Shown here in pieces: positions 3,401 to 39,028 of a stretch of DNA of 64,000 bases. The stretch is taken from positions 124,001 to 188,000 of the IMG/VR virus record IMGVR_UViG_3300033997_000478; one strand, 5' to 3'. The notes under the pieces were generated by a model. It ran no database searches and had not been told where the DNA came from. It was given only the letters and a program-made list of their open reading frames with translations. Position 1 is the first letter of the stretch; every line of letters begins with the position of its first letter. Made by a program: the position numbers and the translations under genes.

Positions 3401-3421
3401 CCCTCAAGTTCAGAAGAAACC

Positions 3422-6024: not shown

Positions 6025-6026
6025 CC

Positions 6027-6857: not shown

Positions 6858-6902
6858 TCAACCGGTGGGGTCTTCGGACCCCACCTTTCAAGGAATGTGA
6901 TC

Positions 6903-7358
6903 ATGTCCAACAAGATCGATACGACGGTCCACCTGACCGACAAGGAAAAGTACAACCCGCTGTTCTGGCAGGACGGTCGTGCAGGGCCTGCCAATATCGT
7001 CACCTACAACGGTGAGGACTGCCGCGGCGTTTCGTTTGTGGCCGATGACGATGCCCGCAAGGAAATCATCGACCACCACAACCTGGGTGTGCGCCTACTG
7101 TACGAGCACCTCCAGAAGACCCACTTCCAGTCGGTCCAGCAGAAGCTGGCCGAAGTCGCCCTGACGGCCAATACCCCGGCCGCAGCCTATGAGCTGGCCA
7201 CGCGTTTCCATGATACCTACGAGCGCTTGGCGCCGCAGTTTGGGTATGAAACCCGTCAGGACACCAAGCTGTTCGATCCCACCACTCCCAATGGTCAGCT
7301 GATGTTGGCTGTGGCCAGGGAGATCCTCAAGGACTACCTCCCATTGGGTGATGCATGA
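6903..7358 (+). CDS. Hypothetical protein
   Basis: ORF; ATGA overlap with the next gene. Confidence 0.7.
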   Translation: MSNKIDTTVHLTDKEKYNPLFWQDGRAGPANIVTYNGEDCRGVSFVADDDARKEIIDHHNLGVRLLYEHLQKTHFQSVQQKLAEVALTANTPAAAYELATRFHDTYERLAPQFGYETRQDTKLFDPTTPNGQLMLAVAREILKDYLPLGDA

Positions 7359-8140
7359 AACGCGAAGAAGCCACGGCCAACGTATTGGCCAAGCTCAAGG
7401 AAAAAGGCATTGTCGGTGAGCTGGCCGCTTCGATCGCCGACAAGCTGACCGCCGATCTGCTCTTCGAATCGGAGCTGGAGAAGATGCTGCACGAGCGGTG
7501 TAGCCACCCGCTTTACGAATACGTCACCAAGGAAGGGGGCAAGTCGGATACGGAAGACTACCCGCCGGAAGGTAAGGGGTGGGAGATCAACGTCGACCTC
7601 TACAACGGTTACTATAAGCACGACAACTACGTCGACAACTACTGGCGCCGTGAGAAGAAGCATGCGTTGACCGACAACGTGCCGATCTTCGATCTGCCGG
7701 AAGTGCGCATCCGCAAGCGAGATTTCGCTGAAGTCATCGCTCGACTGCGTGAGCAGTATCCTGCCACCGTGATCTATGGCGGCACCGGCAACTCCCTCAC
7801 CAGCAAGCCGGAGTACGTGTCCACTCCGACTGCCTTCTTCCACGGCAGTCATCAGCCGGGCTTGCTGGCGTATTCGCCGGACACCTACGTGCTTGATCGG
7901 GAGTGGGAGAACTTCCCCTTCCATCCACACGAGTCCGATACCCGGAGTCCGGTGTATATCCAACTGGCCCCGGAAGACCATCCCTTCGAACTGCTGATCG
8001 ACGGTCGTGATCCGGAAGGCAACTCCTGGGTCCGCACCAAGACCAAGGGCGGTAGCTGGGGTGATTGGGAGCAGATCGCAACGAACACCCCGTTGCCCAT
8101 CCATCCCACAGCGTGGGAAAAACTGACCGACATGATCTGA
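7355..8140 (+). CDS. Hypothetical protein
   Basis: 261 aa ORF, translationally coupled. Confidence 0.75.
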   Translation: MKREEATANVLAKLKEKGIVGELAASIADKLTADLLFESELEKMLHERCSHPLYEYVTKEGGKSDTEDYPPEGKGWEINVDLYNGYYKHDNYVDNYWRREKKHALTDNVPIFDLPEVRIRKRDFAEVIARLREQYPATVIYGGTGNSLTSKPEYVSTPTAFFHGSHQPGLLAYSPDTYVLDREWENFPFHPHESDTRSPVYIQLAPEDHPFELLIDGRDPEGNSWVRTKTKGGSWGDWEQIATNTPLPIHPTAWEKLTDMI

Positions 8141-8147
8141 GGTAAAT

Positions 8148-8357
8148 GTGGACACCGTTAAGATGGACATCACCACCCAAAGCTATCCCACGCAGTTCAC
8201 CTATCGGGTACCGCACAGCCCCGGTAAGACCACCATCTTACCTGGCATGTTGTCCATGTCCGGCTGGGCCGGTGCTCCCTTCGAAGGTAAGCGCAAGAAA
8301 GCCCGCACCCTCAGTGCCATCAGCCGTATCGCCAAGCGTCGCAACAAGAGGAAGTAG
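8148..8357 (+). CDS. Small basic protein
   Basis: K/R-rich C-terminus; GAGG SD. Confidence 0.55.
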   Translation: MDTVKMDITTQSYPTQFTYRVPHSPGKTTILPGMLSMSGWAGAPFEGKRKKARTLSAISRIAKRRNKRK

Positions 8358-8359
8358 TC

Positions 8360-8551
8360 ATGCCGTCGAGCAGCCATGATTCGTACTACAAGGGTCTTCA
8401 GAAGTTGGAACAACAGGGACTGAGTACCCGCGTTGCCAACGATGTGATGTACCTGCGCAAGCAGGCCGGTCACACCCCCGCTCGTGAGGAGCGGTTCATC
8501 CAAGAAGCCAAGGCTGGCTCGATCCCTGACGTCACTACGTTTGCCAAGTAA
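8360..8551 (+). CDS. Hypothetical protein
   Basis: 63 aa ORF followed by a hairpin at 8558-8579. Confidence 0.6.
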   Translation: MPSSSHDSYYKGLQKLEQQGLSTRVANDVMYLRKQAGHTPAREERFIQEAKAGSIPDVTTFAK

Positions 8552-8609
8552 CTGTGCTCCCCCACCTTTGGGTGGGGGACATTCTATGTCCCTTTCTTTT
8601 GGATAGCAC

Positions 8610-9272
8610 ATGTCCCAATATCAGCTCAACAACGCGTTCGTCGACAACATGGACCCCCATCAGCAGTTGGTGGCTTCGGCGATGCGTCCCAGCGCCAAGC
8701 AGGTGCGCTTCCGTCTGGTGGACAGCGAAGGCGGCGAATACTGGTTCGTCCAGAAAGAGCCGGCCAAGCTGGAAGCCAAAACGCTGATCGACATGGCCTC
8801 CGCACTGCTGCAGCAGCTGTACATCCGCTGGCGCGCCAACTTCGATCAGGTGGAGATCATCATCCCCACGCATGTGTCCGAACGTACTTGCGATGTCTCC
8901 GGCCAGACCAATGAGTTCATCTACTGCGACAAGTTCGTAGTCAAGTCCTTCCACCAGAACGGCTACGATGCCAGTGCGATCGCGCTGCGCACCCCCTCCT
9001 TCGTGGGCGAGTGGCGCAACCGCAATTTCGACGCCGACATCGGTCTGGAATTCATGCGCATGCTCGACCAGGATAGCCGGATCTTGGAACTGACCTTCCA
9101 TCCGGAAGTGGAAGACTTCGCCCACGGCGTGGTCGACACGAACAAGGTCATGCAGGAAGTGGCCGATGGTCTGCACAGTTCGCTGGGTCTGCTGTTGCGG
9201 TCGATGGAGTACATCAACCCACTGACTGGTGAAAGCAAGTTCTACACCCCGGTGTACATCCCGGCCGAGTGA
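8610..9272 (+). CDS. Hypothetical protein
   Basis: 220 aa ORF with strong codon bias. Confidence 0.75.
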   Translation: MSQYQLNNAFVDNMDPHQQLVASAMRPSAKQVRFRLVDSEGGEYWFVQKEPAKLEAKTLIDMASALLQQLYIRWRANFDQVEIIIPTHVSERTCDVSGQTNEFIYCDKFVVKSFHQNGYDASAIALRTPSFVGEWRNRNFDADIGLEFMRMLDQDSRILELTFHPEVEDFAHGVVDTNKVMQEVADGLHSSLGLLLRSMEYINPLTGESKFYTPVYIPAE

Positions 9273-9275
9273 CGA

Positions 9276-9310
9276 CATAGACCCCCCGCCTTCGGGCGGG
9301 GGTTTTATGA
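9276..9310 (+). terminator. Intrinsic terminator
   Basis: cccccgcc-TTCG-ggcggggg followed by tttt. Confidence 0.8.
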
Positions 9311-9320
9311 TCCCAATCAT

Positions 9321-9345
9321 TTTCAGACCCGTATTACCCCTGTGA
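9321..9345 (+). promoter_or_regulatory. Putative phage early promoter
   Basis: TTTCA-N6-TATTAC-N5-TGA; the same spacing recurs at 9928, 32029, 37189, 39890. Confidence 0.7.
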
Positions 9346-9393
9346 GCGTCCCACAAAGACATTCATTCCATTAATACAGGAGAAACCTTTCAC

Positions 9394-9849
9394 ATGGAAA
9401 ATAACAACACTTCGGCTTTTGTCAGCACCGACCAGAGCTTCTTCGACGAAGGTCTCGTCATCCACGTCGGCAAGCAGGTCGAGCAGGATGCCATCGACCA
9501 GATGGTGGCCGCCATCGCGGCAACGTACGATGCGCAGGGTCTCTCCCTGGCCTTCGCCGTCGAGCGTAGCATTTACTACGCCCCGACCATGAAGCTGTCC
9601 TACAAGGCCGCCTTCAAGTTCACCCAGCCCGACGGCACCAGCCATGGCCAGGAACTGGAGTTCGACATCCGCAGCAACTCGCTCGGCGACTTCTTCACCG
9701 CCCGCGGCGCTGCGCTGAACGCGTTCCAGTGGAACATCCTCAACGGCCTGCGCCAGCAGCTGGAAAACGGCAAGCCGGCCAGTGAAGTGCTGGACGTGAT
9801 GAACCAGTTCATCACCAAGTTCCCGCGCCTGAACAACCTGGGCCTGTAA
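9394..9849 (+). CDS. Hypothetical protein (probably highly expressed)
   Basis: AGGAG SD; extreme C-ending codon bias; own promoter and terminator. Confidence 0.8.
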   Translation: MENNNTSAFVSTDQSFFDEGLVIHVGKQVEQDAIDQMVAAIAATYDAQGLSLAFAVERSIYYAPTMKLSYKAAFKFTQPDGTSHGQELEFDIRSNSLGDFFTARGAALNAFQWNILNGLRQQLENGKPASEVLDVMNQFITKFPRLNNLGL

Positions 9850-9927
9850 GCCTCGGCGCCTGCCCCCGAAGGGGCAGGCCTTTGGCAGGGCTTTTCTTTT
9901 GGACAAAAACCCACCCAAAGAAAAATG

Positions 9928-9952
9928 TTTCACCGCTATACTACACTCGTGA
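9928..9952 (+). promoter_or_regulatory. Putative phage early promoter
   Basis: A-tract plus TTTCA-ccgcta-TACTAC-actcg-TGA. Confidence 0.72.
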
Positions 9953-9988
9953 AGTTGGACCTAATAATTACCTCATGGAGAGTTGTGA

Positions 9989-10420
9989 ATGAAGAGTTTT
10001 GAAGAAGTAGCACGTCTGGGTCATTCGGAGTTTCGTAAGGCCCTGCTGCGTTTGCCGCAGATCGAATTCAATCCGGAATGGTCGGGTAATTACCTGTCCA
10101 CTTTGGTGACCTGCAAGTTGTTTGTCAAGCCGGTCTGGTTTGTCGATGAGCGCAGCGGTTGCGTGCTCGTCATTCCGGTGGCGGGTCTGGGCAATATGGT
10201 TGTCTCGGAGATGTGTCCGGGTCAACCCACCACGTACCCATTGTTTGTGGAGTGCGCGGAAGGTTTACCGCTCATCGGTGGTCGTTGGGAAATCACGATC
10301 GACGATGTACGTAGCAAGTGGAGTCAAACCAAGGCGGTAACCAACGCCCGCCTTGACACGCAGTACCTGTTGGACCTGATCACCACGGCCGAAAATCAAG
10401 TAGGCCTCACCCTGGAGTAA
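9989..10420 (+). CDS. Hypothetical protein, apparent paralogue of 32114-32509
   Basis: Shared QIEFNPEW..G.Y / VDE....VLVIP..GNMVV.E pattern. Confidence 0.72.
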   Translation: MKSFEEVARLGHSEFRKALLRLPQIEFNPEWSGNYLSTLVTCKLFVKPVWFVDERSGCVLVIPVAGLGNMVVSEMCPGQPTTYPLFVECAEGLPLIGGRWEITIDDVRSKWSQTKAVTNARLDTQYLLDLITTAENQVGLTLE

Positions 10421-10425
10421 CTGTC

Positions 10426-10800
10426 ATGGAACTTTTCTCTGTTCTGGTTGCTGCGTACCTGGGCCTGGAGTGTCTTGCCAACTTCAACCAGGTCTACGCT
10501 TACGTCAACAAGCGTGAACCCTGGAAGATCACCAAGTGGTCCTCCAACCTGTTCTACAAGTGGCACCCCAAGCTGGGCGTGTTCTACTACCTGATCATGA
10601 TCGCTCTGATGGTGTGCTACACCTTCGGCATGGGCGTGATTGAATCCTGGCTGTTGTTCTTCATGGCGATCATCTACGGTTTCACCACGATCTTTGCCTG
10701 GTTCGTGCTGGCTCGCAAGAGCGAGCACAAGCAGGTGCAGGTGCAGATGAACGCCATCGGGCCGCAGGGTGGAATGACCCCGCCGCCGATCCCGCAGTAA
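10426..10800 (+). CDS. Membrane protein (about 3 TM)
   Basis: Hydrophobic segments; GGAG SD. Confidence 0.75.
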   Translation: MELFSVLVAAYLGLECLANFNQVYAYVNKREPWKITKWSSNLFYKWHPKLGVFYYLIMIALMVCYTFGMGVIESWLLFFMAIIYGFTTIFAWFVLARKSEHKQVQVQMNAIGPQGGMTPPPIPQ

Positions 10801-10957
10801 GCTGTAGCCGCCCCTAGAAGTCTCGTGCTTCTAGGGGCGGTGATGGTGCGTAGTTTTTTCTACGCGTGCTAAGTTGTATGACCCAAGGAGTTCGCATGAA
10901 CCAGATCCCGAGTTTCCCGTTATGCCGATGTAGCGGCTATAACCGGAGACCCACCCA

Positions 10958-11248
10958 ATGTCACGTACTACCCGGCGCAACAAGCGTCACCTGATCCTCG
11001 ACACCCTCGGGGATTTCCCCCGCTTCGTCAACGACATCTTCGGCTGGCCGCGCAGTGCGGTCTTGATGCTCATGTCGTACAGCGCGCTCTACGGAAAGAT
11101 CTGGATTCCGTGCTCGATCGCCATCCTGGCCGCTTTGTTCGTTCCTTTCGATCCCCAGTTGCAGGTGTGGGTGGTTGGTTTGACCATCACCTACCTGGCA
11201 CAGCGGGCCGTGTCCACGTTCATCATCAAGGGTCTGAACACCCCATGA
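10958..11248 (+). CDS. Small protein with Arg-rich N-terminus (MSRTTRR) and hydrophobic C-terminus
   Basis: ORF track; GGAG SD inside a hairpin. Confidence 0.65.
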   Translation: MSRTTRRNKRHLILDTLGDFPRFVNDIFGWPRSAVLMLMSYSALYGKIWIPCSIAILAALFVPFDPQLQVWVVGLTITYLAQRAVSTFIIKGLNTP

Positions 11249-11310
11249 GCAATAGTGCCTATGCGGCCGCAGAGTTAGGTGAGTAGTCTCACTTAACCTG
11301 GAGCCTGAAG

Positions 11311-11646
11311 ATGTCCCGTACTTTCCGTCGTACTCGTAAGAACGCTGTCCAGCAACACATGGGCACCTTTGGCGAGTTCAAGGGATACTGGTGGATGCAG
11401 CAGACCGCTGATCGCAAGGGGATGACCCTGCGTGAACTGTTTGACCTGCACACCCGTCAGTTCCACATGGACCGCGATAACGAAGGCCGTCGCAATCCGC
11501 CCCGTTGGTGGCGCCGTGATTTCGGTGCCAAACGTGTGCGCATTGCCAACAAGCGTATGCTGCAGCGTCATCTGGAATACGACACTTTCGACATGCACAC
11601 CCCGGAGCCGTTCGTGAACCGTCACTTCGTCACGTTCTGGCTCTAA
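11311..11646 (+). CDS. Arg-rich small protein (MSRTFRR...PPRWWRR)
   Basis: ORF track; GGAG SD inside a hairpin. Confidence 0.72.
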   Translation: MSRTFRRTRKNAVQQHMGTFGEFKGYWWMQQTADRKGMTLRELFDLHTRQFHMDRDNEGRRNPPRWWRRDFGAKRVRIANKRMLQRHLEYDTFDMHTPEPFVNRHFVTFWL

Positions 11647-11738
11647 AAGGAGAAATGGCCGATGGCCAAAAATGAAAGGGGACTCAAGCGAGGCAGCCCC
11701 TGCACGCAACGTGCAGGGGGCCTAACCGGAGTCGACCC

Positions 11739-11996
11739 GTGGCAAATCGTACCCGCGCCGAAAGGCGCCATCATTATCGTCGCATGATCGCAAAGCGCAC
11801 TAAGCAGGACGCTACTCGTGGCGTTGGTCTTCCCAACGAAAAGGAGTGGTTGTTTATGCATGCCCGCGTTAGGGCGCGCACGGGCACCCTGTGCTCTTGC
11901 TCTATGTGTTGCTCCCCGCGCTATGTGTACGGTAATGGCAAGGCCGCTAAAACCTGGCAGGAGTTGGCCGCCCTGGAACACTTGAAAGAACGTTAA
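11739..11996 (+). CDS. Arg-rich small protein with CSCSMCCSPR motif
   Basis: GTG start; GGAG SD inside a hairpin. Confidence 0.7.
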   Translation: MANRTRAERRHHYRRMIAKRTKQDATRGVGLPNEKEWLFMHARVRARTGTLCSCSMCCSPRYVYGNGKAAKTWQELAALEHLKER

Positions 11997-12016
11997 CAGC
12001 CTAAATAGGAGGGCTT

Positions 12017-12145
12017 ATGAAGAAGGTACTGGTTATCGGTTTCATGGCCCTCCTGCTGGTGGGCTGTGGCAAGCACCCGGCGCAGCAGGGCATTGAAGAA
12101 GCCTTTGCTGCCGAGAAGGCCAAGAGCACAATCCCCGCCCAATAA
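12017..12145 (+). CDS. Small lipoprotein (42 aa)
   Basis: AGGAGG SD; MKKVLVIGFMALLLVG|C lipobox; absent from the ORF track. Confidence 0.7.
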   Translation: MKKVLVIGFMALLLVGCGKHPAQQGIEEAFAAEKAKSTIPAQ

Positions 12146-12314
12146 GGGCGGGGCTTTATGCCGTTTTAACGGTGTCTGAATGTGCACCAAATGGTCAAAC
12201 CTTGTAGTAGAAAGGGGCGATTCAAAGAGAAGTCAAACCCACACTATCTCCGTGTAAGGGGCCTCCAACCCTTTATGCGGATGCAGTAACCCTTTTATCT
12301 AGCAGGAGAGCGTC

Positions 12315-12572
12315 ATGTACAGTGGCGTGCGTATCGAAGTTCGGGGAGCTACGCCTGAGGATGTGGCTTCCATTGTACAGAAGATCGAAGCGATGCTTGG
12401 GCAGAAGCAGGTCTTCCTCTGTGGCGGTGCCGTAGCGCCATCGGCCGAGGTCTCTAAGATCCTCTCCCCTACAGTGCAGCGAGCTGTCGATCAATCGCAC
12501 CGTTACCCCCTCATCACGATGGCTGACAGTAAACCGTTGGCGATCACCCTCGTAGGACGTTTGGAAGAGTAA
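12315..12572 (+). CDS. Hypothetical protein
   Basis: AGGAG SD; 85 aa. Confidence 0.6.
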   Translation: MYSGVRIEVRGATPEDVASIVQKIEAMLGQKQVFLCGGAVAPSAEVSKILSPTVQRAVDQSHRYPLITMADSKPLAITLVGRLEE

Positions 12573-12628
12573 CGTCCCGAGTTCACCGTTGTATCCACCG
12601 CAGTATCCACACAAGAGAGAATAGCACC

Positions 12629-14101
12629 ATGGGGAACACCCGCTTCAATCGCAGCACTCTGGTCGCTGCAATCCTGGCCCTGGCAGTGTCGGGCCCGACC
12701 TTCGCTCAGACCACGCCGGCACCGTCGTGCCCGCCGGGTACGGCGTCGTGCTCGATCCAAGACCAGCAGATGGGCGATACCGACAACTCGTCCAGTGCCA
12801 ACGGCAGCCATTCCAATGCCAGCCAGTCCGGCACCAGCTCCAACAGCAACCAGTCCGGCAATGCCATGACGGGTAGCTACGACAACTCGTCGCAGAACTC
12901 GTCGACCACCACCGGTGAAATCAACGGTACGATCACCGGCGGCAACACCAGCTCCCAGGGCGGCAGTGCAACCGGCGGTGCCGGCGGTTCGGCCACGGGC
13001 AACCTGAGCAACAACGACAACGACAACCGCTCCTCGGTTGGCAACACGTCCAGCAATTCGGGCGGCAACTCGATGGTGGGTGGCTCCAACACCAACAACA
13101 CCGGTGGCAATTCGGTCACCGGCGGTGATGTCAGCAATACCAACAGCACCGGTGGTAACACCCTGACTGGTGGTGCGCTGACGGGCGGTAACAACACCAG
13201 CAACATGAACGGTGGCAATTCGAGCAACACCAATGGCAACGCCAACAACGTGGCCGGCGGTAACAACACCTCGAACTCCAACCTGACCGGTGGCAATACC
13301 TCCAGCAACAACGCCAATGCGCTGAACGGCGGTAACAACTCGGCCACCACGGGCAACAACACCAACAGCCTGGGCCAGGGTCAGTCCAACGACAACTCCG
13401 GCAACAGCACCAACACCGTTGGCCAGTCGTCCAGCAATGCCAACTCGCAGGGCCAGAGCAGCAGCAACACCAATGGTCAGTCGAGCCGCAACACCAACGC
13501 CCTGAGCAACGGCAGCAACTCCGGTGGCAACCAGACCTCCTCCGGTTCGTCGGCCAACAACAGCGGTGGCAACAACGCCGTCAACATCGACAGCTCCAAC
13601 CGTTCTTCGTACAAGTCGATCTTCATCCCGAGCGTGGTTCCGATGACTCCGCCGTCCACGGTGGCCATTGGCAACATCATCAAGGAAACCACTGCCTGCG
13701 GCCCGCTGCAGGACGTGCAGAAGACCGAAGTGCTGGGCATGTTCATCGGCCTGGTGAAGAAGGTGCGCATCCATCAGGGCTACACCTACGACCTGGTGGA
13801 AAAGCGTGATGCCAACGGCGAACTGCTGCCGTACTACATCCAGCCGCTGAAGGATCGTCCGGGCTACCGCATGTTCGGTCACCAGAAGATCATCTTCGCT
13901 TCGATGGCCGGTGTGTCGTCCAACCGCAATATCGCCCTGGGCGGCGGCAGTGGTAACGGCGACTGGGGTCAGGCCGGTATGGGCAGTTCCTCGTCCAACA
14001 CTCGTATCGTGACCAACATTCAGTTGGCACTGTGCGAGATCGGCACCGTGGAACCGGAAGTGCGTTACATCGAAGTTGCTCCGCGCAAGGGCAAGGAATA
14101 A
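12629..14101 (+). CDS. Secreted Asn/Gly/Ser/Thr-rich low-complexity protein with a Cys-containing C-terminal domain
   Basis: Signal peptide ending TFA|Q; about 280 aa of GGN/SSN repeats. Confidence 0.8.
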   Translation: MGNTRFNRSTLVAAILALAVSGPTFAQTTPAPSCPPGTASCSIQDQQMGDTDNSSSANGSHSNASQSGTSSNSNQSGNAMTGSYDNSSQNSSTTTGEINGTITGGNTSSQGGSATGGAGGSATGNLSNNDNDNRSSVGNTSSNSGGNSMVGGSNTNNTGGNSVTGGDVSNTNSTGGNTLTGGALTGGNNTSNMNGGNSSNTNGNANNVAGGNNTSNSNLTGGNTSSNNANALNGGNNSATTGNNTNSLGQGQSNDNSGNSTNTVGQSSSNANSQGQSSSNTNGQSSRNTNALSNGSNSGGNQTSSGSSANNSGGNNAVNIDSSNRSSYKSIFIPSVVPMTPPSTVAIGNIIKETTACGPLQDVQKTEVLGMFIGLVKKVRIHQGYTYDLVEKRDANGELLPYYIQPLKDRPGYRMFGHQKIIFASMAGVSSNRNIALGGGSGNGDWGQAGMGSSSSNTRIVTNIQLALCEIGTVEPEVRYIEVAPRKGKE

Positions 14102-14160
14102 GCAATATCGGGGGCGGTCTCTGATCGCCCCCTCTCAATCTTTTTACATGGAGAGTTTCA

Positions 14161-14532
14161 ATGTTCGGTTGGTCCAAGCGCCCGAAGAAGGCTAAGAAAG
14201 AAAGCAGGTATCCGCCGGGTTCAAACCCGGCACTTACTCCTGAAGAACGTGAACGTCGCAGGGAGCAGCGAAGGGCTAACGCGCCCTCCCCGGCACCTCC
14301 GCCCGCTCACAGAGATGATTGGCGCAGGATGGAGTTGGACCTTGCCAATACGTCACTTCATCTCTCCGGTCTGCAGAAGACCCTCAACTCGATGACCGAC
14401 CAACTGGCCATGCATGCTGAACGCGATGTCAGGGTGGTGGCCGTCGTCGGACGGGTGTCGCGTGGTGAGCTCGATGCCCAGGCCGGTATCGATCAGATCA
14501 TCCAGTTGTATTTCAACGGGAACACACGATGA
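14161..14532 (+). CDS. Hypothetical protein
   Basis: GGAGAG SD. Confidence 0.65.
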   Translation: MFGWSKRPKKAKKESRYPPGSNPALTPEERERRREQRRANAPSPAPPPAHRDDWRRMELDLANTSLHLSGLQKTLNSMTDQLAMHAERDVRVVAVVGRVSRGELDAQAGIDQIIQLYFNGNTR

Positions 14533-14939
14533 CCAGCAATACCAATCCGTTCAATCCTGATGCCAAGATCGAGATCGACGTGCCGGCTGATGGTGAGTCA
14601 TTCCAAGACTGGATGGACAAGACACCCTTTGATCCAATGCGGTTCGCTACGTCGTTGCTCGACGCTGAGCAGCGCGCACATGGACTTGAGTGGCTGAAGA
14701 TCCTGCGTCGGACTGCCGCAGACCTCGACGCCGGTGTGATCAAGCGCGATGAGTTCATCAACGAACGCAACATCGCCAGTGCGGCACATCGACTGGGTCA
14801 TTTTGCTTATGCCCAAATGGGTGTCGAAAAGCTGATGGCCATTGCTGAGGACACCAAGGACCCCCATCGACAGGAGTTGTTCCTCAAGCTGATCTTGGCG
14901 CTGGAAGAGCGTCAGAAATACACCCACCGTTCTTTCTGA
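14529..14939 (+). CDS. Hypothetical protein
   Basis: ATGA overlap with the previous gene. Confidence 0.7.
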   Translation: MTSNTNPFNPDAKIEIDVPADGESFQDWMDKTPFDPMRFATSLLDAEQRAHGLEWLKILRRTAADLDAGVIKRDEFINERNIASAAHRLGHFAYAQMGVEKLMAIAEDTKDPHRQELFLKLILALEERQKYTHRSF

Positions 14940-14950
14940 GGGCTGCGAAC

Positions 14951-15343
14951 ATGTTTTCTCTCTGGGCAACCCGCTACCTTGAAGACGGGGTGGTTCATCT
15001 CCACCTGGATACGGTCGACACCGCAACTGGCGATGTGATCCAAGTCCTCAACGAAGCACAGGCCGCCGAGATCCAGTCGATGGTGGGGCGGTATCCAGGC
15101 ATCGCCTACCGAACTCCCAACTTCGTGTATATCACGTTGGGTCCGGTGGGTAATTACCTGCTGGAACATTTCCCGGACACGTTCTCCCACATGGTCCATT
15201 ACGACCCGCGTCTCTTGACGTCGCCGTTGAAGACCAACATCCACACCGACCTGCCGCCCTGCGAGAACGGCCCCGGCCCCCTGTCCATGCGCGTCCCTGC
15301 CGGTGAACCGCTGCCGATTTTGATGCCACTACTGAAGGAATGA
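14951..15343 (+). CDS. Hypothetical protein
   Basis: ORF track. Confidence 0.7.
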   Translation: MFSLWATRYLEDGVVHLHLDTVDTATGDVIQVLNEAQAAEIQSMVGRYPGIAYRTPNFVYITLGPVGNYLLEHFPDTFSHMVHYDPRLLTSPLKTNIHTDLPPCENGPGPLSMRVPAGEPLPILMPLLKE

Positions 15344-15697
15344 ATGATGGACGCAGTAACTGTATTCGTGGCCAAGGCGTTGATCTGCTTCGCAGGTCAG
15401 TGTCACCCGGCACTGGTGGGGCATGACACAATCCCCGGTACGTACGACATGTCGATCCTGTACACGCAGCAGCGTGGCTACGGTGGCGACGTGCTGATGT
15501 ACGACTCGGATGATCGCAGCTGGAATGCCATCCACTCCACCTACACGCTCGATCCGCGCCGCAAGCGCGAGGAGCTGTACCTGAACACCACGGCCGCCGA
15601 GCGGACCGTGACGGCCGGCTGCGTGAACGTTGAGCCGGAGATCTATCAGGATCTGCGCGACAACTACCGCAACCTCCCGCTGGTGATCATGCCGTGA
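15344..15697 (+). CDS. L,D-transpeptidase (YkuD-like) domain protein
   Basis: PALVG..T.PG.Y, AIH and TAGCVNV (His/Cys catalytic motif). Confidence 0.7.
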   Translation: MMDAVTVFVAKALICFAGQCHPALVGHDTIPGTYDMSILYTQQRGYGGDVLMYDSDDRSWNAIHSTYTLDPRRKREELYLNTTAAERTVTAGCVNVEPEIYQDLRDNYRNLPLVIMP

Positions 15698-15777
15698 TGC
15701 GGTTTCTGATCCGCATGATCACTTTCCGGTTCGCCGGACCCAGCATCACCCTCCCGATGTAACTACAAGGACTAGCA

Positions 15778-16254
15778 ATGCGTATTGTCAAACGAGCTGA
15801 ACTTCTGCAGCAGCCGCACGGCACCATGTTCTCCAAGTGCAAATCGCTGTCTTTCGACGACCTGTACATCTTCTTGGGTCCGTTCGGCAACGACTTCGTC
15901 TATGATTCCCTGCTCGGTATCGATTTCGGGAATCCGGCGAACGTGGACAAAGCGACGGACGCACTGGAGGATTCCTCCATCGAGGTCGACATCGATCTCT
16001 ACTGTTCCGCACGCTGGGGTAACTTTGACGAAGAAGAAACCTTCGCCATCTACTCCGCCGAAGAGCAGGCCGCGTTCATCGCTCGCATCCAGTACGCACT
16101 GTACCGGCGCCTGGTTACCGAATCCCCGCAGTTCCCGGAACACCTGATCACCGTGGTGTCCCCACACGCGGACGTCGTTGAACATTCCACCAACATCATC
16201 AAGGGCGTGTTCCAAGACGCCATCGTCCTCGGCTCCGTTCGCGCCAAAGACTGA
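15778..16254 (+). CDS. Hypothetical protein (paralogue of next gene)
   Basis: Starts MRIVKRAELLQQPHGTMFS. Confidence 0.75.
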   Translation: MRIVKRAELLQQPHGTMFSKCKSLSFDDLYIFLGPFGNDFVYDSLLGIDFGNPANVDKATDALEDSSIEVDIDLYCSARWGNFDEEETFAIYSAEEQAAFIARIQYALYRRLVTESPQFPEHLITVVSPHADVVEHSTNIIKGVFQDAIVLGSVRAKD

Positions 16255-16279
16255 CCCCTCCCTTCCAAGGATAGCAATC

Positions 16280-16636
16280 ATGCGTATCGTCACCCTGCAG
16301 CAGATGCTGCGTGAACCCAACGGCACTGTCTTCTCGGTGGAGCAGTTCGAGAACATCAACGATCTGTTCATCAAGACCGGCAACCGTGAAGACGGCAAGG
16401 GCATCTTGCACAACACCCTGATCGCTCCGCGCGACAACCCCGAACGCGGCGATGCGCTCGAAGCGATCGAACGTGCCATCGAAGATCCTGACCACGTGAT
16501 CGACCTGAACTTCGACGCCGTCCACAGCTTCACCCGACGCGACGAAGTCAACATCTGCATCTACGACATCGGCGAGATCAACCAGATGATCGCCAAGCTG
16601 CAGAACGCCCTCCACATCCTGCCGATCCGGCAGTAA
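16280..16636 (+). CDS. Hypothetical protein (paralogue of previous gene)
   Basis: Starts MRIVTLQQMLREPNGTVFS. Confidence 0.75.
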   Translation: MRIVTLQQMLREPNGTVFSVEQFENINDLFIKTGNREDGKGILHNTLIAPRDNPERGDALEAIERAIEDPDHVIDLNFDAVHSFTRRDEVNICIYDIGEINQMIAKLQNALHILPIRQ

Positions 16637-16646
16637 GGTAACGATC

Positions 16647-16946
16647 ATGTCCAAGCTCTACAAAAGTGTCTACGATGGTGAAGAAGACGGCGACTTCGTC
16701 ATGGATCCCGATGGTGATGTTCTGGTGTTCTGCTCCGAACCCAGCGATGCGTCGCTACTGGTGGAACACCTGAACGAGCCGCTGTATGGTGGTGGTTACA
16801 CCATCGAAGATCCGGAAGAAGACGAGGAAGAAGGCGACGAAGAGCCGCTGTTCACGCTGCTCGATCCGGAAGGCGACGACATCTTCTACCATGAAAGTCG
16901 TGCCGTGCTGGAAACCCTGATCAGCCACCTGAACCGCCTGCAGTAA
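16647..16946 (+). CDS. Very acidic small protein with internal duplication
   Basis: DPDGD..F...LVEHLN repeated as DPEGDD.F...LISHLN. Confidence 0.7.
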   Translation: MSKLYKSVYDGEEDGDFVMDPDGDVLVFCSEPSDASLLVEHLNEPLYGGGYTIEDPEEDEEEGDEEPLFTLLDPEGDDIFYHESRAVLETLISHLNRLQ

Positions 16947-16979
16947 CACCCAAGCAATACCCACACATGGAGAGTAGGA

Positions 16980-17168
16980 ATGTCCCGATACAAGGACGCC
17001 GTAGCTAAACCCGGCAGCTGGCTTGCGCAGTTCCAAGCCAGCCGTCCCACCCGCATGAAGCGTTTCCCCAATGCTCAAGAAGAGGCCGAAGACTACGAGC
17101 CCGCTGAGTTGGAAATGTCTGACGAACCCATCCGCTTGGACTCGCCTGAGTTCGACTTCTTTGATTGA
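16980..17168 (+). CDS. Hypothetical protein
   Basis: GGAGAG SD. Confidence 0.6.
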   Translation: MSRYKDAVAKPGSWLAQFQASRPTRMKRFPNAQEEAEDYEPAELEMSDEPIRLDSPEFDFFD

Positions 17169-17180
17169 AAGGAATCCATC

Positions 17181-17594
17181 ATGCTGCCCCATGTAATCGT
17201 TAAGCCTGATCCGCTGGTGTTCAGCGATGGTCAGGAAATTGAAGTCGCCATTCAAGTCATCGCTAAAGACAGCGACACCCTTGCTACGCTCGGCATCAAG
17301 TTGGTCAGGTACAAGAAAAAGACCTACGCGATGCTGACCAAGATCGAGGGTCCGGTTGAACAGTTCGCTCGTTTTGCTGAGACGATGGTGGCTGTGATCA
17401 AGCGATGCATTGCCGGCTGGGAGTGCTGGGCTGTCGAGAAGGATCTTTTTGCCATCGATCCTGAGATCTACGACGTGCTCCCTCACAGCGTGCTTGATTT
17501 CGTCGAGATCGACGACGAGTTGTTGTTCTTCAGTTCCAAGGGCGTGGCGCATTTCAGCGACACCGTCCCGCTGTACAAGATCGAGATGGCTTAG
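17181..17594 (+). CDS. Hypothetical protein
   Basis: AAGGA SD. Confidence 0.7.
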   Translation: MLPHVIVKPDPLVFSDGQEIEVAIQVIAKDSDTLATLGIKLVRYKKKTYAMLTKIEGPVEQFARFAETMVAVIKRCIAGWECWAVEKDLFAIDPEIYDVLPHSVLDFVEIDDELLFFSSKGVAHFSDTVPLYKIEMA

Positions 17595-17692
17595 TTCCAC
17601 CTGTTGTAATCCCAGTGTTGTACCGTGCATTGGGCGCTGGCGGGCGCCCTTTGCACACCTTTCCAACCCGCCTAGAGAAGAGAGAGCAAACC

Positions 17693-18196
17693 ATGAAGAT
17701 GATCAAGAGCATGCTGGCCGTGGCCCTGCTGGCCGTTTCGTCCGTCGCCATGGCCCAGTCGGCCGGCGCTGGTGGTACCGTGGGTGTGGGCGCAGTCGGC
17801 GGTGCCGGCTACACCAAGACCGACTACGCCTCCAATGCCACCGGCAACGCCAGCTCCTCCACCGGTGGTGGCGGCATGGCCCAGTCCAACGTCCAGGGCA
17901 CCGGCTTCAGCGCCCAGGCCAACGTTGGCGCCGGCCAGACCAGCGCGTACTCCAACGCCGAAATCGGCAAGGGCTACGTGAACACCAACACCGGCGGCTC
18001 CAACACCGTCTACAACACCTCGGCCGGCTACACCATCGGCAACGCTGCCGGTACCGCTGAAGGCCAGGTCGGTGGCGACTACAGCTCCAAGGCCGTCGGC
18101 AACCACGCCACCAGCTACACCGGTTCGGACGTGACCGGCTACGTGTACCTGGGTGCCGGCTTCAACATCGGCGTGTACCAGTACACCCAGCCGTAA
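17693..18196 (+). CDS. Secreted Gly/Ala/Ser/Thr-rich protein
   Basis: Signal peptide MKMIKSMLAVALLAVSSVAMA|Q; beta-prone low complexity; extreme codon bias. Confidence 0.8.
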   Translation: MKMIKSMLAVALLAVSSVAMAQSAGAGGTVGVGAVGGAGYTKTDYASNATGNASSSTGGGGMAQSNVQGTGFSAQANVGAGQTSAYSNAEIGKGYVNTNTGGSNTVYNTSAGYTIGNAAGTAEGQVGGDYSSKAVGNHATSYTGSDVTGYVYLGAGFNIGVYQYTQP

Positions 18197-18285
18197 GCGA
18201 TCCCTGCGAAGGGGGAACGGGGATCGGCCCTCACCGAGGGCCGTCCCTACCTGCAACACAACGTCCCTAAGGGGGAGTTCTTTCC

Positions 18286-18978
18286 ATGAAGCACCTGATG
18301 ATCGTGGCCGCGCTCGGCCTTGCTATCGCAGCCCCGGCATGGGGTCAGGATAGTACCCTCACCAGCAACAACACCAGCAGTTCCAGTTCGTCCACCTCCT
18401 CGCAGTCGGGGGCGATGAACCAGGGTGTACAGGCCACCGTCAACCAGATGTCCTCTGGTACGGTGGAGTACAGCGGCAGTTACACGCAAGACGTGCGGGC
18501 CCAGGTCCCGCTTTCGGTCGTCGGTTACGGCAGCTTCTCGCAGAACAACTGCCAGAACTCCGTGGGCGTCGGCGCCACCTCCCGCGTGTTCTCCTTCGTC
18601 TACAACGGACCGAAGGGCAATCCGCACTGCGAGGCGATCACTCGTTCGGACCAGTTCGGCCGCGAATCGCAGCTCGCCTATGCCCAGGGCCGCTCCCGCG
18701 ATGCGGAGCTGCTGCGCTCGATGAGCGTGTGGGAAACCTGCAACACCAACGAGACCACCAAGCAGGCTTGCCTGAAGATGGGTCTGGTCGACGGGGCTAC
18801 CTCGGTCGATGCTCGTGGGCGTGAATCGTCCATGATCCATCCCAAGCCGAACATGATCGAATCCCGTCCGATCGCGCAAGTCTCCGAGCCGACCTCGGGG
18901 CAGCAGGTGGTGCAGCCCACGGCGGCACAGGTGGTGGGTAGCAACGGCGCTGCGGCGCTGGTGCACGCCCGTAACTGA
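18286..18978 (+). CDS. Secreted protein with Ser-rich N-terminus and four-Cys domain
   Basis: Signal peptide ending AWG|Q; four Cys in the mature part. Confidence 0.78.
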   Translation: MKHLMIVAALGLAIAAPAWGQDSTLTSNNTSSSSSSTSSQSGAMNQGVQATVNQMSSGTVEYSGSYTQDVRAQVPLSVVGYGSFSQNNCQNSVGVGATSRVFSFVYNGPKGNPHCEAITRSDQFGRESQLAYAQGRSRDAELLRSMSVWETCNTNETTKQACLKMGLVDGATSVDARGRESSMIHPKPNMIESRPIAQVSEPTSGQQVVQPTAAQVVGSNGAAALVHARN

Positions 18979-18986
18979 TGGTCCGG

Positions 18987-19020
18987 CAGGGGGAGGAAAC
19001 TCCCCCTGTCTTTTATTTTT
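18987..19020 (+). terminator. Intrinsic terminator
   Basis: cagggggag-GAAA-ctccccctg followed by a T-tract. Confidence 0.8.
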
Positions 19021-19074
19021 CCCTCAGGAGAGCAATTAGATGTTGATCGAAAACTACCGTATGGAGATTGCAGC

Positions 19075-19488
19075 ATGAGTATCCCCGATTGGTTGATTTA
19101 CACGGCCGTACTGGTTCTGATGGTTCTGAATATCGCGCGCTCCCACCGCCGGTTCAAGGTCGCCCGCATTCTGTCCGAGCGGGTGGAGCAGGTTGGCCAG
19201 AAGGACTACAACCTGATGGTGCGCGCTTACGAGGCGCGTAACAATGGGTGGCGCGAATTGCGCATGCTCTTCGAGTTCGTCTGGCCGGTCTTTCTGATTG
19301 GACCGTACATCCCTTACGCCAACGGTTTCATCAAGACGCTGTGGATGCTCCAAGGTCTGGTAATGACCGTGGCCTACGTCATGCTCTGGTCGACCATACG
19401 TCAAGACTGGGGTCAGGACCACGTCCGCTATCTGCGGCACCTCCGCTGGCGCAAGCAGCAGAACTTCCCGATTTTCCGAGCCCCGTAA
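19075..19488 (+). CDS. Membrane protein
   Basis: Three hydrophobic segments; GGAG SD. Confidence 0.7.
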   Translation: MSIPDWLIYTAVLVLMVLNIARSHRRFKVARILSERVEQVGQKDYNLMVRAYEARNNGWRELRMLFEFVWPVFLIGPYIPYANGFIKTLWMLQGLVMTVAYVMLWSTIRQDWGQDHVRYLRHLRWRKQQNFPIFRAP

Positions 19489-19500
19489 GGAGAGAGTTTC

Positions 19501-20142
19501 ATGATTGGTGCTGAGCACATGAGTTGCCACCACTGGGCGGTGTACGAGAAGATCACCGCCCTGTTGGCGGTGGCCCAAGCCACTCCGGTGGAGACTATGG
19601 ATGACATTGCCGAAGAGTTCGGCGTCTTCCGGGTCCCCGACACCCACCCCCACGCGCCGGAGGAGTTCAAGTACGCCTACGTGCTGAGCTTGGAGGTTCC
19701 CTCCAATCACCGCGTGGCTGCCGAGAACGAAACCCCGCTGCGCTTCACCGTGGTCAAGCACGGTCAGTCTCAGAGCGGTTTCATGCGTGTCCTGCCGCCG
19801 GGTGGTCGGGAGTGGGTTGCCTTCTACACTCTCAACGAAATACACCTGAGCGTGCTGGAACCGCTGGTTGATACGTTGCTGGAATCTTATCCGGGTGTCA
19901 CCCAGCAGATGGAGTGGCAGTCGGTGCAGTATCGTGGCCAGCAGGCTGTGGCGCAGCTGATCGAAGTGCTGCACGAACGCAACCAGTTCGAGAAGCCCGA
20001 AGTGGAGTTGCTGGAAACGCTGGCACAGGTCTTCCTCCTGAAGAACGTGGACGCGCCGAACCCGCAGGCCAGTGCCTATGCCAAGGCGCTGCACAACTCG
20101 GCGCTGGAAACGGCCAAACTGGTCTTGGATCGTCTGAAGTAA
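19501..20142 (+). CDS. Hypothetical protein
   Basis: AAGGAG SD; 213 aa. Confidence 0.75.
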   Translation: MIGAEHMSCHHWAVYEKITALLAVAQATPVETMDDIAEEFGVFRVPDTHPHAPEEFKYAYVLSLEVPSNHRVAAENETPLRFTVVKHGQSQSGFMRVLPPGGREWVAFYTLNEIHLSVLEPLVDTLLESYPGVTQQMEWQSVQYRGQQAVAQLIEVLHERNQFEKPEVELLETLAQVFLLKNVDAPNPQASAYAKALHNSALETAKLVLDRLK

Positions 20143-20148
20143 TCGGCG

Positions 20149-20200
20149 GCATAAACCCCCTGCCTTCGGGCAGGGGGAACATATGCTGTTTTTTCTTTTC
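20149..20200. terminator. Terminator between convergent genes
   Basis: ccccctgcc-TTCG-ggcaggggg with GCATAA 5' flank and T-tract. Confidence 0.75.
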
Positions 20201-20204
20201 GCCC

Positions 20205-20729: not shown

Positions 20730-20796
20730 TGGGGGTTACTCCACGGGGAACACGTACCACATATTATGTCAGTACTTTTTAACAGAGGATCCCAAT

Positions 20797-21978: not shown

Positions 21979-21988
21979 AGGAGTCAAC

Positions 21989-38866: not shown

Positions 38867-38943
38867 AGGGATGTCGTCAAGTGGTCTAAGACACGGTCTT
38901 TTGATGTCCGCACGCGTAGGTTCGAATCCTGCCATCCCTGCCA
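38867..38943 (+). tRNA. tRNA-Gln (TTG)
   Basis: AGGGATG/CATCCCT acceptor, loop TT-TTG-AT, GGTTCGAATCC, encoded CCA; one anticodon-stem mismatch. Confidence 0.88.
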
Positions 38944-38952
38944 CAGTTTCAA

Positions 38953-39028
38953 GGGTCAGTAGCTCAATAAGGATAGAGCAGCGATCTCTGGTCGTTGGTT
39001 GAAGGTTCGAGTCCTTCTTGACCCGCCA
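38953..39028 (+). tRNA. tRNA-Arg-like gene with a 5-nt anticodon loop (atypical)
   Basis: Intact acceptor, D and T arms and CCA; GCGAT-CTCTG-GTCGT; body resembles tRNA-Arg(UCU). Confidence 0.7.

What the first reader, a model, noticed from the sequence alone, without database searches (positions are those of the whole stretch)
12629..14101. Secreted 490-aa Asn/Gly/Ser repeat protein, possibly a functional amyloid or beta-solenoid
Seen: a Sec signal peptide, a Cys pair, about 280 aa almost entirely N/G/S/T/Q with recurring (L/V)TGGN, GGNN.S and GQSS units and few charged or aromatic residues, then a domain with two Cys. Known: curli (CsgA) and Fap subunits are secreted N/Q/G/S-rich repeat proteins, though the exact curlin repeat is not evident here. 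Virion proteins do not use signal peptides. Inference: the phage remodels the envelope or surface of the infected cell (aggregation, receptor masking, superinfection exclusion).
Basis: partly seen in the sequence, partly recalled or inferred. Interest (0 to 1): 0.6.

Follow-up and report, generated by a model that had tools for sequence, protein, structure and literature searches.

The report
Exported partner of a phage mini-transpeptidase
The gene is real and encodes an exported protein, but its Asn/Gly/Ser-rich part looks like a floppy spacer rather than an amyloid; the conserved part is a new C-terminal domain that almost always travels with a tiny peptidoglycan-enzyme gene, in phages and a few bacteria.

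Summary
ORF 12629..14101 (+) encodes 490 aa: a Sec-type signal peptide, a Cys34/Cys41 loop, 276 residues that are 79% N/S/G/T, and a C-terminal domain with Cys357/Cys469.

The amyloid/beta-solenoid reading is not supported. AlphaFold gives pLDDT of about 30 and no secondary structure for residues 36-326. No curlin or other family matches. In relatives this region runs from 0 to about 330 residues and can be Ala/Pro-rich instead.

The conserved unit is the last ~165 residues. It is an all-beta domain with no Pfam, PHROG, NCBIfam, PDB-sequence or fold match, and has 278 representatives among 1.84 billion proteins.

In 28 of 31 main-branch loci, a ~115-aa gene follows directly, usually with a 4-nt overlap. 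These loci include jumbo, sipho- and Mu-like phages, Sphingomonas, Variovorax and Burkholderia. That gene is a leaderless, minimal YkuD (L,D-transpeptidase) fold: Z 12.5 over 103 of 117 residues, with invariant His and Cys. In this window it lies at 15344..15697, split off by three inserted ORFs.

Best reading: this is the exported half of a mobile, peptidoglycan-directed two-gene module. How a leaderless enzyme would meet a periplasmic partner is unresolved. I found no published description of the module.

The parts
12629..12706 (+). Signal peptide (residues 1-26), with predicted signal peptidase I cleavage after T-F-A
   Evidence: Sequence read directly. An equivalent N-terminal hydrophobic leader ending in A-x-A occurs in homologues. 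A crude hydropathy test finds a leader in 128 of 141 full-length family members.
12707..12778 (+). Small N-terminal disulfide-loop motif (residues 27-50; Cys34 and Cys41, C-P-x-G-x-x-x-C then S-x-Q)
   Evidence: Conserved in LucasX, Sphingomonas and metagenomic homologues in alignment A2.
12779..13606 (+). Low-complexity N/S/G/T spacer (residues 51-326), predicted to be disordered
   Evidence: Composition. pLDDT about 30 and no secondary structure. Variable length and composition across the family. A 24-nt (8-codon) indel at 13058-13069 in related phage contigs.
13607..14101 (+). Conserved C-terminal all-beta domain (residues 327-474; Pro-rich F-I-P-x-V-V-P lead-in, invariant Cys357 and Cys469, Gly-rich W-G-Q loop), a basic C-terminal tail (475-490) and the stop codon
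   Evidence: tblastn and profile hits cover only this part. Core pLDDT is 84-93. No family, PDB-sequence or fold match.
14161..15343 (+). Three small ORFs (14161-14532, 14529-14939, 14951-15343) lying between the two module genes. This is a lineage-specific interruption, not part of the conserved module.
   Evidence: No Pfam or PADLOC hits. Absent from all other loci. The nearest relative L019 has different DNA in this position. A related 90.7-kb phage contig (run X5) is colinear through it.
15344..15697 (+). Leaderless minimal YkuD-type L,D-transpeptidase-fold protein (117 aa; His64 at 15533-15535, Cys93 at 15620-15622 in a T-x-G-C-x-N motif). It is the conserved genetic partner of the 490-aa protein.
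   Evidence: Homologous to the gene directly downstream of the C-domain gene in other loci. AlphaFold pLDDT 83. Foldseek and VIA hits are all L,D-transpeptidases, best Z 12.5, rmsd 2.6 A, 103 of 117 residues aligned from residue 1. 17 of 18 members hit Pfam YkuD at E<=0.1.

Best explanation
The 490-aa protein is the exported half of a mobile two-gene, cell-wall-directed module. After Sec export and leader cleavage, it consists of a small disulfide loop, a long disordered N/S/G/T spacer and a conserved C-terminal beta domain of a previously unannotated family. The functional end is the C-terminal domain. It works together with the product of the partner gene, a 117-aa bare YkuD (L,D-transpeptidase-fold) Cys/His enzyme whose chemistry is acyl transfer or hydrolysis at the L,D bond of peptidoglycan stem peptides. 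My preferred mechanism is that the C-domain is the enzyme's protein partner at the sacculus: docked to it, and possibly covalently tied to or released from peptidoglycan by it. The spacer would then act as a flexible tether or brush in the periplasm of the infected cell. The result would be envelope remodelling during the long infection cycle of a jumbo phage. Shown here: the architecture, export signals, disorder prediction, a new conserved domain, the partner's fold and catalytic residues, and the near-obligate gene linkage and co-divergence. Inferred: physical contact (weak support only), action on peptidoglycan, any covalent link, and the benefit to the phage. Sub-probabilities: architecture plus module 0.85; peptidoglycan-directed joint function 0.5; covalent anchoring 0.2.
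For: Only the C-terminal ~170 residues are conserved, in Xanthomonas and Stenotrophomonas phages and in bacteria. A profile search found 278 representatives, with the domain almost always C-terminal. A mini-YkuD gene lies directly downstream (mostly a 4-nt overlap) in 28 of 31 main-branch loci. These include phiXF1, LucasX, DLP_5, XacN1 (where ORF390 is annotated as L,D-transpeptidase), Xoo-sp13 (unannotated), IMG/VR jumbo contigs, a Mu-like phage, Sphingomonas, Rhizorhabdus, Variovorax and Burkholderia. No third gene is conserved. The pairwise distances of the two proteins correlate (r 0.59; 0 of 2000 permutations reach it). The partner's fold is that of L,D-transpeptidases, with invariant His and Cys across 120 further family members. 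Complex prediction of the C-domain with the mini enzyme scored 0.40 (runs 0.40, 0.01, 0.54) against a best control of 0.00, a verdict of 'weak support'. Even numbers of conserved Cys fit an oxidising compartment. A remote branch of the C-domain family sits next to PdaC/DUF3298 cell-wall-related genes. Huge phages are already reported to carry sortase B with an upstream signal-peptide substrate (bioRxiv 10.64898/2026.10.24.761521), which is a precedent for the same logic.
Against: The mini enzyme has no signal peptide. The fold alignment starts at residue 1, the start codons coincide with profile position 1 in all loci, and 115 of 120 relatives have at most 4 residues before the domain. On its face it is therefore cytoplasmic, while the 490-aa protein is periplasmic. 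The complex score is weak, and the three runs share no contacts. A C-terminal Lys, as in Braun's lipoprotein, is common but not universal: K occurs in the last 9 residues in 69 of 97, and K or R in 91 of 97. Each gene can occur without the other: the orphan C-domain P0008, the remote branch, and the Noviherbaspirillum enzyme with a different upstream partner. No experiment bears on either protein.
Confidence: 0.5

Rival explanations
1. Inhibitor or immunity pair. The leaderless mini-YkuD would be a peptidoglycan-active enzyme that reaches a periplasm only from outside or at lysis (ejected from a virion, released by holin, or delivered by a secretion system). The exported C-domain protein would be its periplasmic binding inhibitor, comparable to T4 Spackle against the gp5 lysozyme, or to Tldi1 against the T6SS effector Tlde1.
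For: This explains a leaderless enzyme paired with an exported partner. Leaderless LDT-fold effectors with periplasmic immunity proteins are known (PMC9638812, listed). The complex prediction gives weak support. Orphan C-domain genes exist, like orphan immunity genes. The top, non-significant Foldseek rows for the C-domain are the periplasmic inhibitor ecotin (E 0.09, probability 0.16).
Against: No delivery genes (Hcp, VgrG, PAAR) or structural-module context are conserved nearby. In phages the module sits among nucleotide-metabolism and early-type genes. A ~300-residue spacer is odd for an inhibitor. The C-domain is at least as conserved as the enzyme (mean identity 0.52 against 0.49), unlike typical fast-evolving immunity proteins. 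The ecotin rows are statistically meaningless.
Confidence: 0.2
2. Separate compartments. The mini-YkuD would be an ElsL-like cytoplasmic L,D-carboxypeptidase that trims recycled murein tetrapeptides. The 490-aa protein would act independently in the periplasm or on the surface. The two would be linked only through a shared pathway, such as cell-wall turnover during infection.
For: ElsL of Acinetobacter baumannii is a leaderless YkuD domain shown to be cytoplasmic and to cleave tetrapeptide to tripeptide (PMC8649774). The mini enzyme is leaderless family-wide.
Against: The near-obligate adjacency with overlapping stop and start codons across phyla and phage types, together with the weak complex signal, suggests a closer relationship than a shared pathway. 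The invariant cross-strand Cys pair (C15/C20), and a second Cys pair that is lost only as a pair, look like disulfides, which are unusual in the cytoplasm. No NCBIfam model links the enzyme to a known recycling family.
Confidence: 0.2
3. The N/G/S-rich region would fold into a beta-solenoid or functional amyloid (curli- or Fap-like) fibre on the cell surface.
For: Asn-rich, Gly/Ser-rich secreted sequences can be amyloid-prone (general knowledge). Recurrent GGN-type units are present. AlphaFold with 18 sequences is a poor judge of low-complexity segments.
Against: There is no Curlin_rpt or other repeat family. pLDDT is about 30 with no strands. There is almost no hydrophobic or aromatic content. 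The length ranges from 0 to 328 residues, and the composition changes to Ala/Pro- or Gly/Ala-rich in relatives while the C-domain stays constant. No curli or Fap secretion genes are nearby. The repeats are irregular at the DNA level.
Confidence: 0.05

Closest known systems
Braun's lipoprotein Lpp with LdtA/LdtB/LdtC (ErfK, YbiS, YcfS) of E. coli, and the LDT-dependent tethering of outer-membrane proteins in other Proteobacteria
   Same: An exported envelope protein is functionally paired with a YkuD-fold Cys enzyme that acts on peptidoglycan stem peptides. Most family members have a basic C-terminal tail, often with Lys.
   Different: Here the enzyme is a bare 117-aa catalytic domain without a signal peptide. 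The partner is not a lipoprotein or a beta-barrel. The tail Lys is not universal. The two genes form a mobile, largely phage-borne operon. No covalent link has been shown.
Sortase B plus upstream substrate genes in huge phages (bioRxiv 10.64898/2026.10.24.761521)
   Same: A phage-borne pair in which the upstream gene encodes a signal peptide, a variable region and a conserved C-terminal element, and the downstream gene encodes a Cys transpeptidase.
   Different: The enzyme fold differs (YkuD, not sortase). There is no LPXTG/PXTG motif, hydrophobic segment or charged tail. The hosts are Gram-negative. The conserved C-terminal element is a 165-residue folded domain rather than a short sorting signal.
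ElsL (LdtK) of Acinetobacter baumannii, a cytoplasmic L,D-carboxypeptidase (PMC8649774)
   Same: A leaderless protein made of a YkuD domain alone.
   Different: No sequence-level assignment to that family was obtained. ElsL is not reported with an exported partner gene. The mini enzyme has conserved extra Cys pairs.
T6SS effector Tlde1 with immunity protein Tldi1 (PMC9638812)
   Same: A leaderless LDT-fold protein encoded next to a periplasmic protein.
   Different: No T6SS genes lie nearby. The gene order is reversed. The module occurs in phages.
Curli CsgA and Pseudomonas FapC functional amyloids
   Same: A secreted protein rich in N, Q, G and S.
   Different: There are no curlin or Fap repeats, no predicted beta structure, no dedicated secretion genes, and the region is not conserved.

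Membership tests
Curli subunit (CsgA/CsgB) | Curlin repeat units (Pfam Curlin_rpt) forming a beta-solenoid | tested here: not met
   No Pfam family at E<=1 for the whole protein. AlphaFold gives no strands and pLDDT about 30 for residues 36-326.
Curli subunit (CsgA/CsgB) | Neighbouring csgB/E/F/G-type nucleator and secretion genes | tested here: not met
   The neighbouring ORFs that were tested have no Pfam hits. The only conserved neighbour across loci is the mini-YkuD gene.
Functional amyloid in general | Forms cross-beta fibres (ThT or Congo-red binding, EM) | not testable with these tools
   This needs purified protein. Composition alone does not decide it.
Sec-exported protein | Basic n-region, hydrophobic h-region, and small residues at -3 and -1 | tested here: met
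   R5 and R8, a hydrophobic core at residues 11-20, and T-F-A before Q27, read. A crude hydropathy test finds a leader in 128 of 141 relatives. SignalP was not available.
Intrinsically disordered spacer | No predicted structure, low hydrophobicity, and length and sequence not conserved among orthologues | tested here: met
   (0-328 residues, median 166). (a 24-nt indel between close relatives).
YkuD / L,D-transpeptidase superfamily (partner gene 15344..15697) | YkuD catalytic-domain fold | tested here: met
   VIA Z 12.5, rmsd 2.6 A, 103 of 117 residues. 81 chains score Z>=8, and every one of the 50 entries listed is an L,D-transpeptidase or YkuD-family protein. Foldseek probability is 1.00.
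YkuD / L,D-transpeptidase superfamily (partner gene) | Pfam YkuD sequence match above the gathering score | tested here: inconclusive
   The window copy has no hit. Relatives score 18.8-19.4 bits against a cut-off of 23.4. 17 of 18 members hit at E<=0.1, best 8e-5.
YkuD / L,D-transpeptidase superfamily (partner gene) | Catalytic His, and Cys in a (S/T)-x-G-C-(I/V)-(N/R) motif | tested here: met
   H64, T90, G92, C93 and N95 are invariant in 18 sequences and in 120 further sequences. The His-Cys spacing is longer than the canonical one.
Periplasmic L,D-transpeptidases (LdtA-E type) | Signal peptide or lipobox that places the enzyme in the periplasm | tested here: not met
   The protein begins at the first strand of the fold.
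Lpp-type peptidoglycan-anchored protein | C-terminal Lys used as the acceptor, and a covalent bond to mDAP | tested here: inconclusive
   The window protein has K487 and K489. Across the family, K occurs in the last 9 residues in 69 of 97 and K or R in 91 of 97. The covalent bond is not testable here.
Sortase substrate | LPXTG-like motif, then a hydrophobic segment, then a basic tail | tested here: not met
   There is no such motif or hydrophobic segment in the last 30 residues.
Outer-membrane beta-barrel | A closed barrel model and a C-terminal aromatic residue | tested here: not met
   The last residue is Q, G or E in 73 of 97 relatives. No barrel match was found in the PDB or the atlas.

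The most novel reading that the evidence does not exclude
A Gram-negative, largely phage-borne counterpart of the sortase-substrate pair. In this reading a leaderless minimal L,D-transpeptidase reaches the periplasm by an unrecognised route. There it covalently couples (or uncouples) an exported protein with a new C-terminal domain and the peptidoglycan, building a disordered polymer brush on the sacculus of the infected cell.
Probability: 0.15. Interest if true: 0.85.

Novelty: new variant of a known kind. Interest (0 to 1): 0.6.

Why it matters
Jumbo phages are being recognised as carriers of envelope-modifying genes, but almost none of these genes have been tested. This analysis defines a compact two-gene module:
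- The partner enzyme family has at least 1154 clusters at 90% identity.
- The C-terminal domain family has 278 representatives at 50% identity, with no annotation in any of the databases searched.
- The module's distribution is phage-dominated and sporadic.

The module poses a clear question: how does a leaderless L,D-transpeptidase-fold enzyme cooperate with a periplasmic protein? Any answer would add a new element to cell-wall biology and phage-host interaction, whether it turns out to be protein anchoring to peptidoglycan in Gram-negative bacteria, a lysin-inhibitor pair, or coupling to cell-wall recycling. It would also annotate hundreds of hypothetical proteins.

Tried and rejected
- **Family scans.** Pfam, PHROGs, NCBIfam and PADLOC scans of the 490-aa protein and of its C-terminal part found nothing.
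- **PDB sequence profiles.** Neither protein's profile gave a usable hit. The only rows for the mini enzyme were chance aminotransferase matches at E 0.28 or worse.
- **Fold searches of the C-domain.** VIA wide gave a best Z of 4.7, with scattered beta-sheet proteins including gasdermin and MAC pores. The atlas gave TM<=0.31. Foldseek gave a best E of 0.09 (ecotin). I treat all of these as noise.
- **ESM Atlas feature search.** No usable hit.
- **Natural fusions.** I looked for fusions of the C-domain with the mini enzyme as proof of a shared compartment. The longer relatives instead carry a different ~90-aa Cys-containing C-terminal extension.
- **Hidden signal peptide.** I rejected the idea that the N-terminus of the mini enzyme is a hidden signal peptide. 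It has invariant residues and aligns to the first strands of YkuD.
- **Tat hitch-hiking.** Rejected, because the leaders contain no twin-arginine motif.
- **Frameshift fusion.** Rejected, because the gene spacing varies from a 4-nt overlap to 1.2 kb.
- **Spanin or outer-membrane barrel.** Rejected, because there is no lipobox, no C-terminal membrane segment and no terminal aromatic residue.
- **Virion proteomics.** The text of the XacN1 paper mentions neither ORF390 nor ORF391, which is uninformative.
- **Complex prediction.** The result gave only weak support and is cited as such.
- **Metatranscriptome contigs.** They match the gene but do not prove transcription.
Full report
**Setting.** The window is bases 124001-188000 of a 324,428-bp viral record with direct terminal repeats, judged complete. 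It has the marks of a jumbo phage: a 1333-aa helicase/primase-like gene, a tRNA cluster and many small unknown ORFs. DNA and protein matches place it among Xanthomonas jumbo phages. Its nearest relative in the collections is a 314-kb IMG/VR contig, L019. The source appears to be subsurface metagenomes, and related sequences occur in soil, indoor, gut and wastewater samples.

**The observation.** ORF 12629..14101 (+) encodes 490 aa.
- Residues 1-26 form a Sec-type leader ending T-F-A.
- Cysteines lie at 34, 41, 357 and 469.
- Residues 51-326 are 79% N/S/G/T, with 11 charged residues and one aromatic residue.
- GGN occurs 11 times, TGGN 5 times and GQSS 3 times.
- DNA-level tandem repeats are weak, so the region is low-complexity rather than a regular array.

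**What is conserved.** No Pfam, PHROG, NCBIfam or PADLOC model matches the protein.
- A tblastn search of phage records matches only residues 318-490. The hits are phiXF1 (86%), LucasX (67%), the Ep026/PhiXhv group (53%), Xoo-sp13, XacN1, and Stenotrophomonas phages DLP_3 and DLP_5 (34%).
- The word search with that region finds relatives in Sphingomonas and in metagenomes.
- A profile search of 1.84 billion representatives finds 278 (250 at E<=1e-10). Total lengths run from 86 aa (fragments) to 610 aa, and the domain is almost always at the C-terminus.
- All full-length relatives share one plan: a leader, often a small Cys loop, a low-complexity stretch, a Pro-rich F-I-P-x-V-V-P segment, an all-beta domain with two invariant Cys and a Gly-rich W-G-Q loop, and a short basic tail.

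**The low-complexity stretch.** This is the least conserved part of the family.
- It spans 0-328 residues (median 166), and its median N+G+S+T fraction is 0.58. The window protein sits at the long, Asn-rich extreme.
- In Rhizorhabdus it is about 50 residues long and Ala/Pro-rich.
- Closely related phage contigs differ from the window by a 24-nt insertion at 13058-13069 that adds one eight-residue unit.

**Structure.** AlphaFold, run on an 18-sequence alignment, gives pLDDT of about 30 and no secondary structure for residues 36-326. It gives a confident (84-93) set of long beta strands for residues 328-474. There is no sign of a solenoid. The C-domain has no convincing structural neighbour: VIA wide gives a best Z of 4.7, the atlas gives TM<=0.31, and Foldseek gives a best E of 0.09. 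A profile search against PDB sequences finds nothing. The domain was searched only as part of the full-length model. "No known fold" is therefore provisional.

**The partner gene.** In phiXF1, LucasX, DLP_5 and Sphingomonas a ~115-aa gene follows directly, and these small proteins are homologous to one another.
- The window's copy is at 15344..15697, 1.2 kb downstream, separated by three unrelated ORFs.
- The two genes are adjacent in 28 of 31 main-branch loci, mostly with a 4-nt overlap. These loci were fetched from species-representative genomes, IMG/VR, phage records and assemblies.
- In the window and in L019 the genes are 1.2-1.9 kb apart, and in L021 the small gene is a fragment.
- XacN1's copy is annotated as L,D-transpeptidase, and Xoo-sp13's copy is unannotated.
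- No third gene is conserved.
- The pairwise distances of the two proteins correlate (r 0.59; 0 of 2000 permutations reach this). That shows joint inheritance, not interaction.

**What the partner is.**
- Its AlphaFold model (pLDDT 83) matches only L,D-transpeptidase catalytic domains. Foldseek gives probability 1.00. VIA gives Z 12.5, rmsd 2.6 A and 103 of 117 residues aligned, starting at residue 1. For Bacillus subtilis YkuD, the aligned part is residues 54-164.
- Seventeen of 18 members hit Pfam YkuD at E<=0.1, although individually below the gathering score.
- His64 and the T-x-G-C-x-N motif with Cys93 are invariant.
- The family is large: at least 1154 clusters at 90% identity, nearly all 113-127 aa, a few of them named murein L,D-transpeptidase by NCBI.
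- It is leaderless throughout. Start codons coincide with profile position 1, and 115 of 120 relatives have at most four residues before the domain. The N-terminal residues are invariant structural positions, not a signal peptide.
- It carries an invariant Cys pair on neighbouring strands (C15/C20). In most bacterial copies it also carries a second adjacent Cys pair, which is lost only as a pair.

**Distribution.** Carriers include jumbo myoviruses (97-455 kb contigs), a siphovirus, a Mu-like temperate phage and a few chromosomes.
- In the Mu-like phage the module lies between Mor and the terminase.
- In Sphingomonas the flanks are ordinary metabolic genes.
- None of 300 other sampled genomes of the Sphingomonas order has the small gene.
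- No Xanthomonas or Stenotrophomonas genome appeared in the species-wide scan, which was limited to its search patterns.

The module is therefore sporadic and mobile, and the phage does not seem to have taken it from its present host.

**Exceptions.**
- A phage-like contig carries the C-domain gene alone.
- A remote branch of the C-domain family has an extra ~90-aa Cys-containing extension and no small gene. It sits next to a PdaC/DUF3298 protein.
- In Noviherbaspirillum the small gene follows a different membrane or exported protein, whose tail also carries a P-P-K-P motif.

**Do the two proteins touch?** Complex prediction of the C-domain with the mini enzyme, using paired alignments, gave a median score of 0.40 (runs 0.40, 0.01, 0.54). 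The best of three controls scored 0.00. The tool's verdict is weak support, and the runs share no contacts. Given the strong prior from gene linkage, I count this as a modest increment only.

**Interpretation.** The amyloid/solenoid idea fails its tests, and the N/S/G/T region behaves as a disordered, evolvable spacer. The firm result is a two-gene module: an exported protein with a new C-terminal domain, plus a minimal YkuD enzyme. Because every characterised YkuD enzyme acts on L,D bonds of peptidoglycan stem peptides, the module is most likely directed at the cell wall.

I prefer a model in which the C-domain is the enzyme's protein partner at the sacculus, possibly anchored or released by it. 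This echoes Lpp with its L,D-transpeptidases, and the sortase B-substrate pairs just reported in huge phages.

The main obstacle is compartment: the enzyme has no export signal. Two rivals deal with that directly. One is a periplasmic inhibitor of a leaderless wall enzyme (Spackle- or Tldi-like). The other is an ElsL-like cytoplasmic L,D-carboxypeptidase working in a shared wall-turnover pathway. The basic tail is often but not always Lys-bearing, which argues against a strict Lpp-type acceptor. I put joint wall-directed function at about 0.5, covalent anchoring at about 0.2, each of the two rivals at about 0.2, and amyloid at about 0.05.

**Expression.** A wastewater metatranscriptome holds two exact 151-nt contigs within the C-domain coding region (13540-13690 and 13712-13862). 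DNA carry-over cannot be excluded, so this is not proof of transcription.

**Literature.** Full-text searches found no description of this module. The XacN1, LucasX and jumbo-phage comparative papers do not discuss it.

Noticed in passing
window 17690-18196 (+): A second exported low-complexity protein (168 aa) with a Sec-type leader followed by a G/A/S/T/N-rich sequence containing many Tyr. Between the window and its nearest relative L019, DNA similarity across window 6001-22000 is limited to the two module genes, this gene (87% DNA identity) and one 59-bp stretch. It has no Pfam or PHROG hit, and only a sub-threshold NCBIfam hit on the leader.
   Followed up: partly
window 39039-39111 (+): ARAGORN reports a tRNA of undetermined identity with a four-base anticodon (taaa), inside a cluster of five tRNA genes at 38867-39492. 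It could be a frameshift-suppressor-like tRNA or a mis-call.
   Followed up: no
L031 about 3088-3429 (Xoo-sp13, MN047793.1): An unannotated mini-YkuD ORF lies in the gap after gene Xoosp13_349, the C-domain homologue.
   Followed up: yes
L032 3794-7677, L033 and L034 162-2468: A remote branch of the C-domain family carries an extra ~90-aa Cys-containing C-terminal module and lacks the mini enzyme. In L032 and L033 its gene sits downstream of a PdaC/DUF3298 (RsiV-like) protein and a 371-aa unknown protein; the short contig L034 shows only the PdaC/DUF3298 gene upstream.
   Followed up: partly
L028 5421-6345 (Noviherbaspirillum saxi): Here the mini-YkuD gene follows a different 191-aa protein with a membrane or leader segment and no C-domain. 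That protein's C-terminal tail also contains a P-P-K-P motif, like many C-domain tails.
   Followed up: partly
window 13058-13069: Related phage contigs in two runs carry a 24-nt insertion here that encodes one extra eight-residue unit of the spacer. This is repeat-number polymorphism between close relatives.
   Followed up: partly
L021 7553-7747: In this 100-kb IMG/VR contig only a fragment of the mini enzyme (profile positions 38-76) follows the C-domain gene. It may be a decayed copy or an assembly error.
   Followed up: no
window 12503-13882 (-): A 459-aa antisense ORF overlaps the gene. It is rich in Val, Ala, Gly and Arg and is best explained as the mirror image of the biased codon composition, not as a gene.
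   Followed up: no
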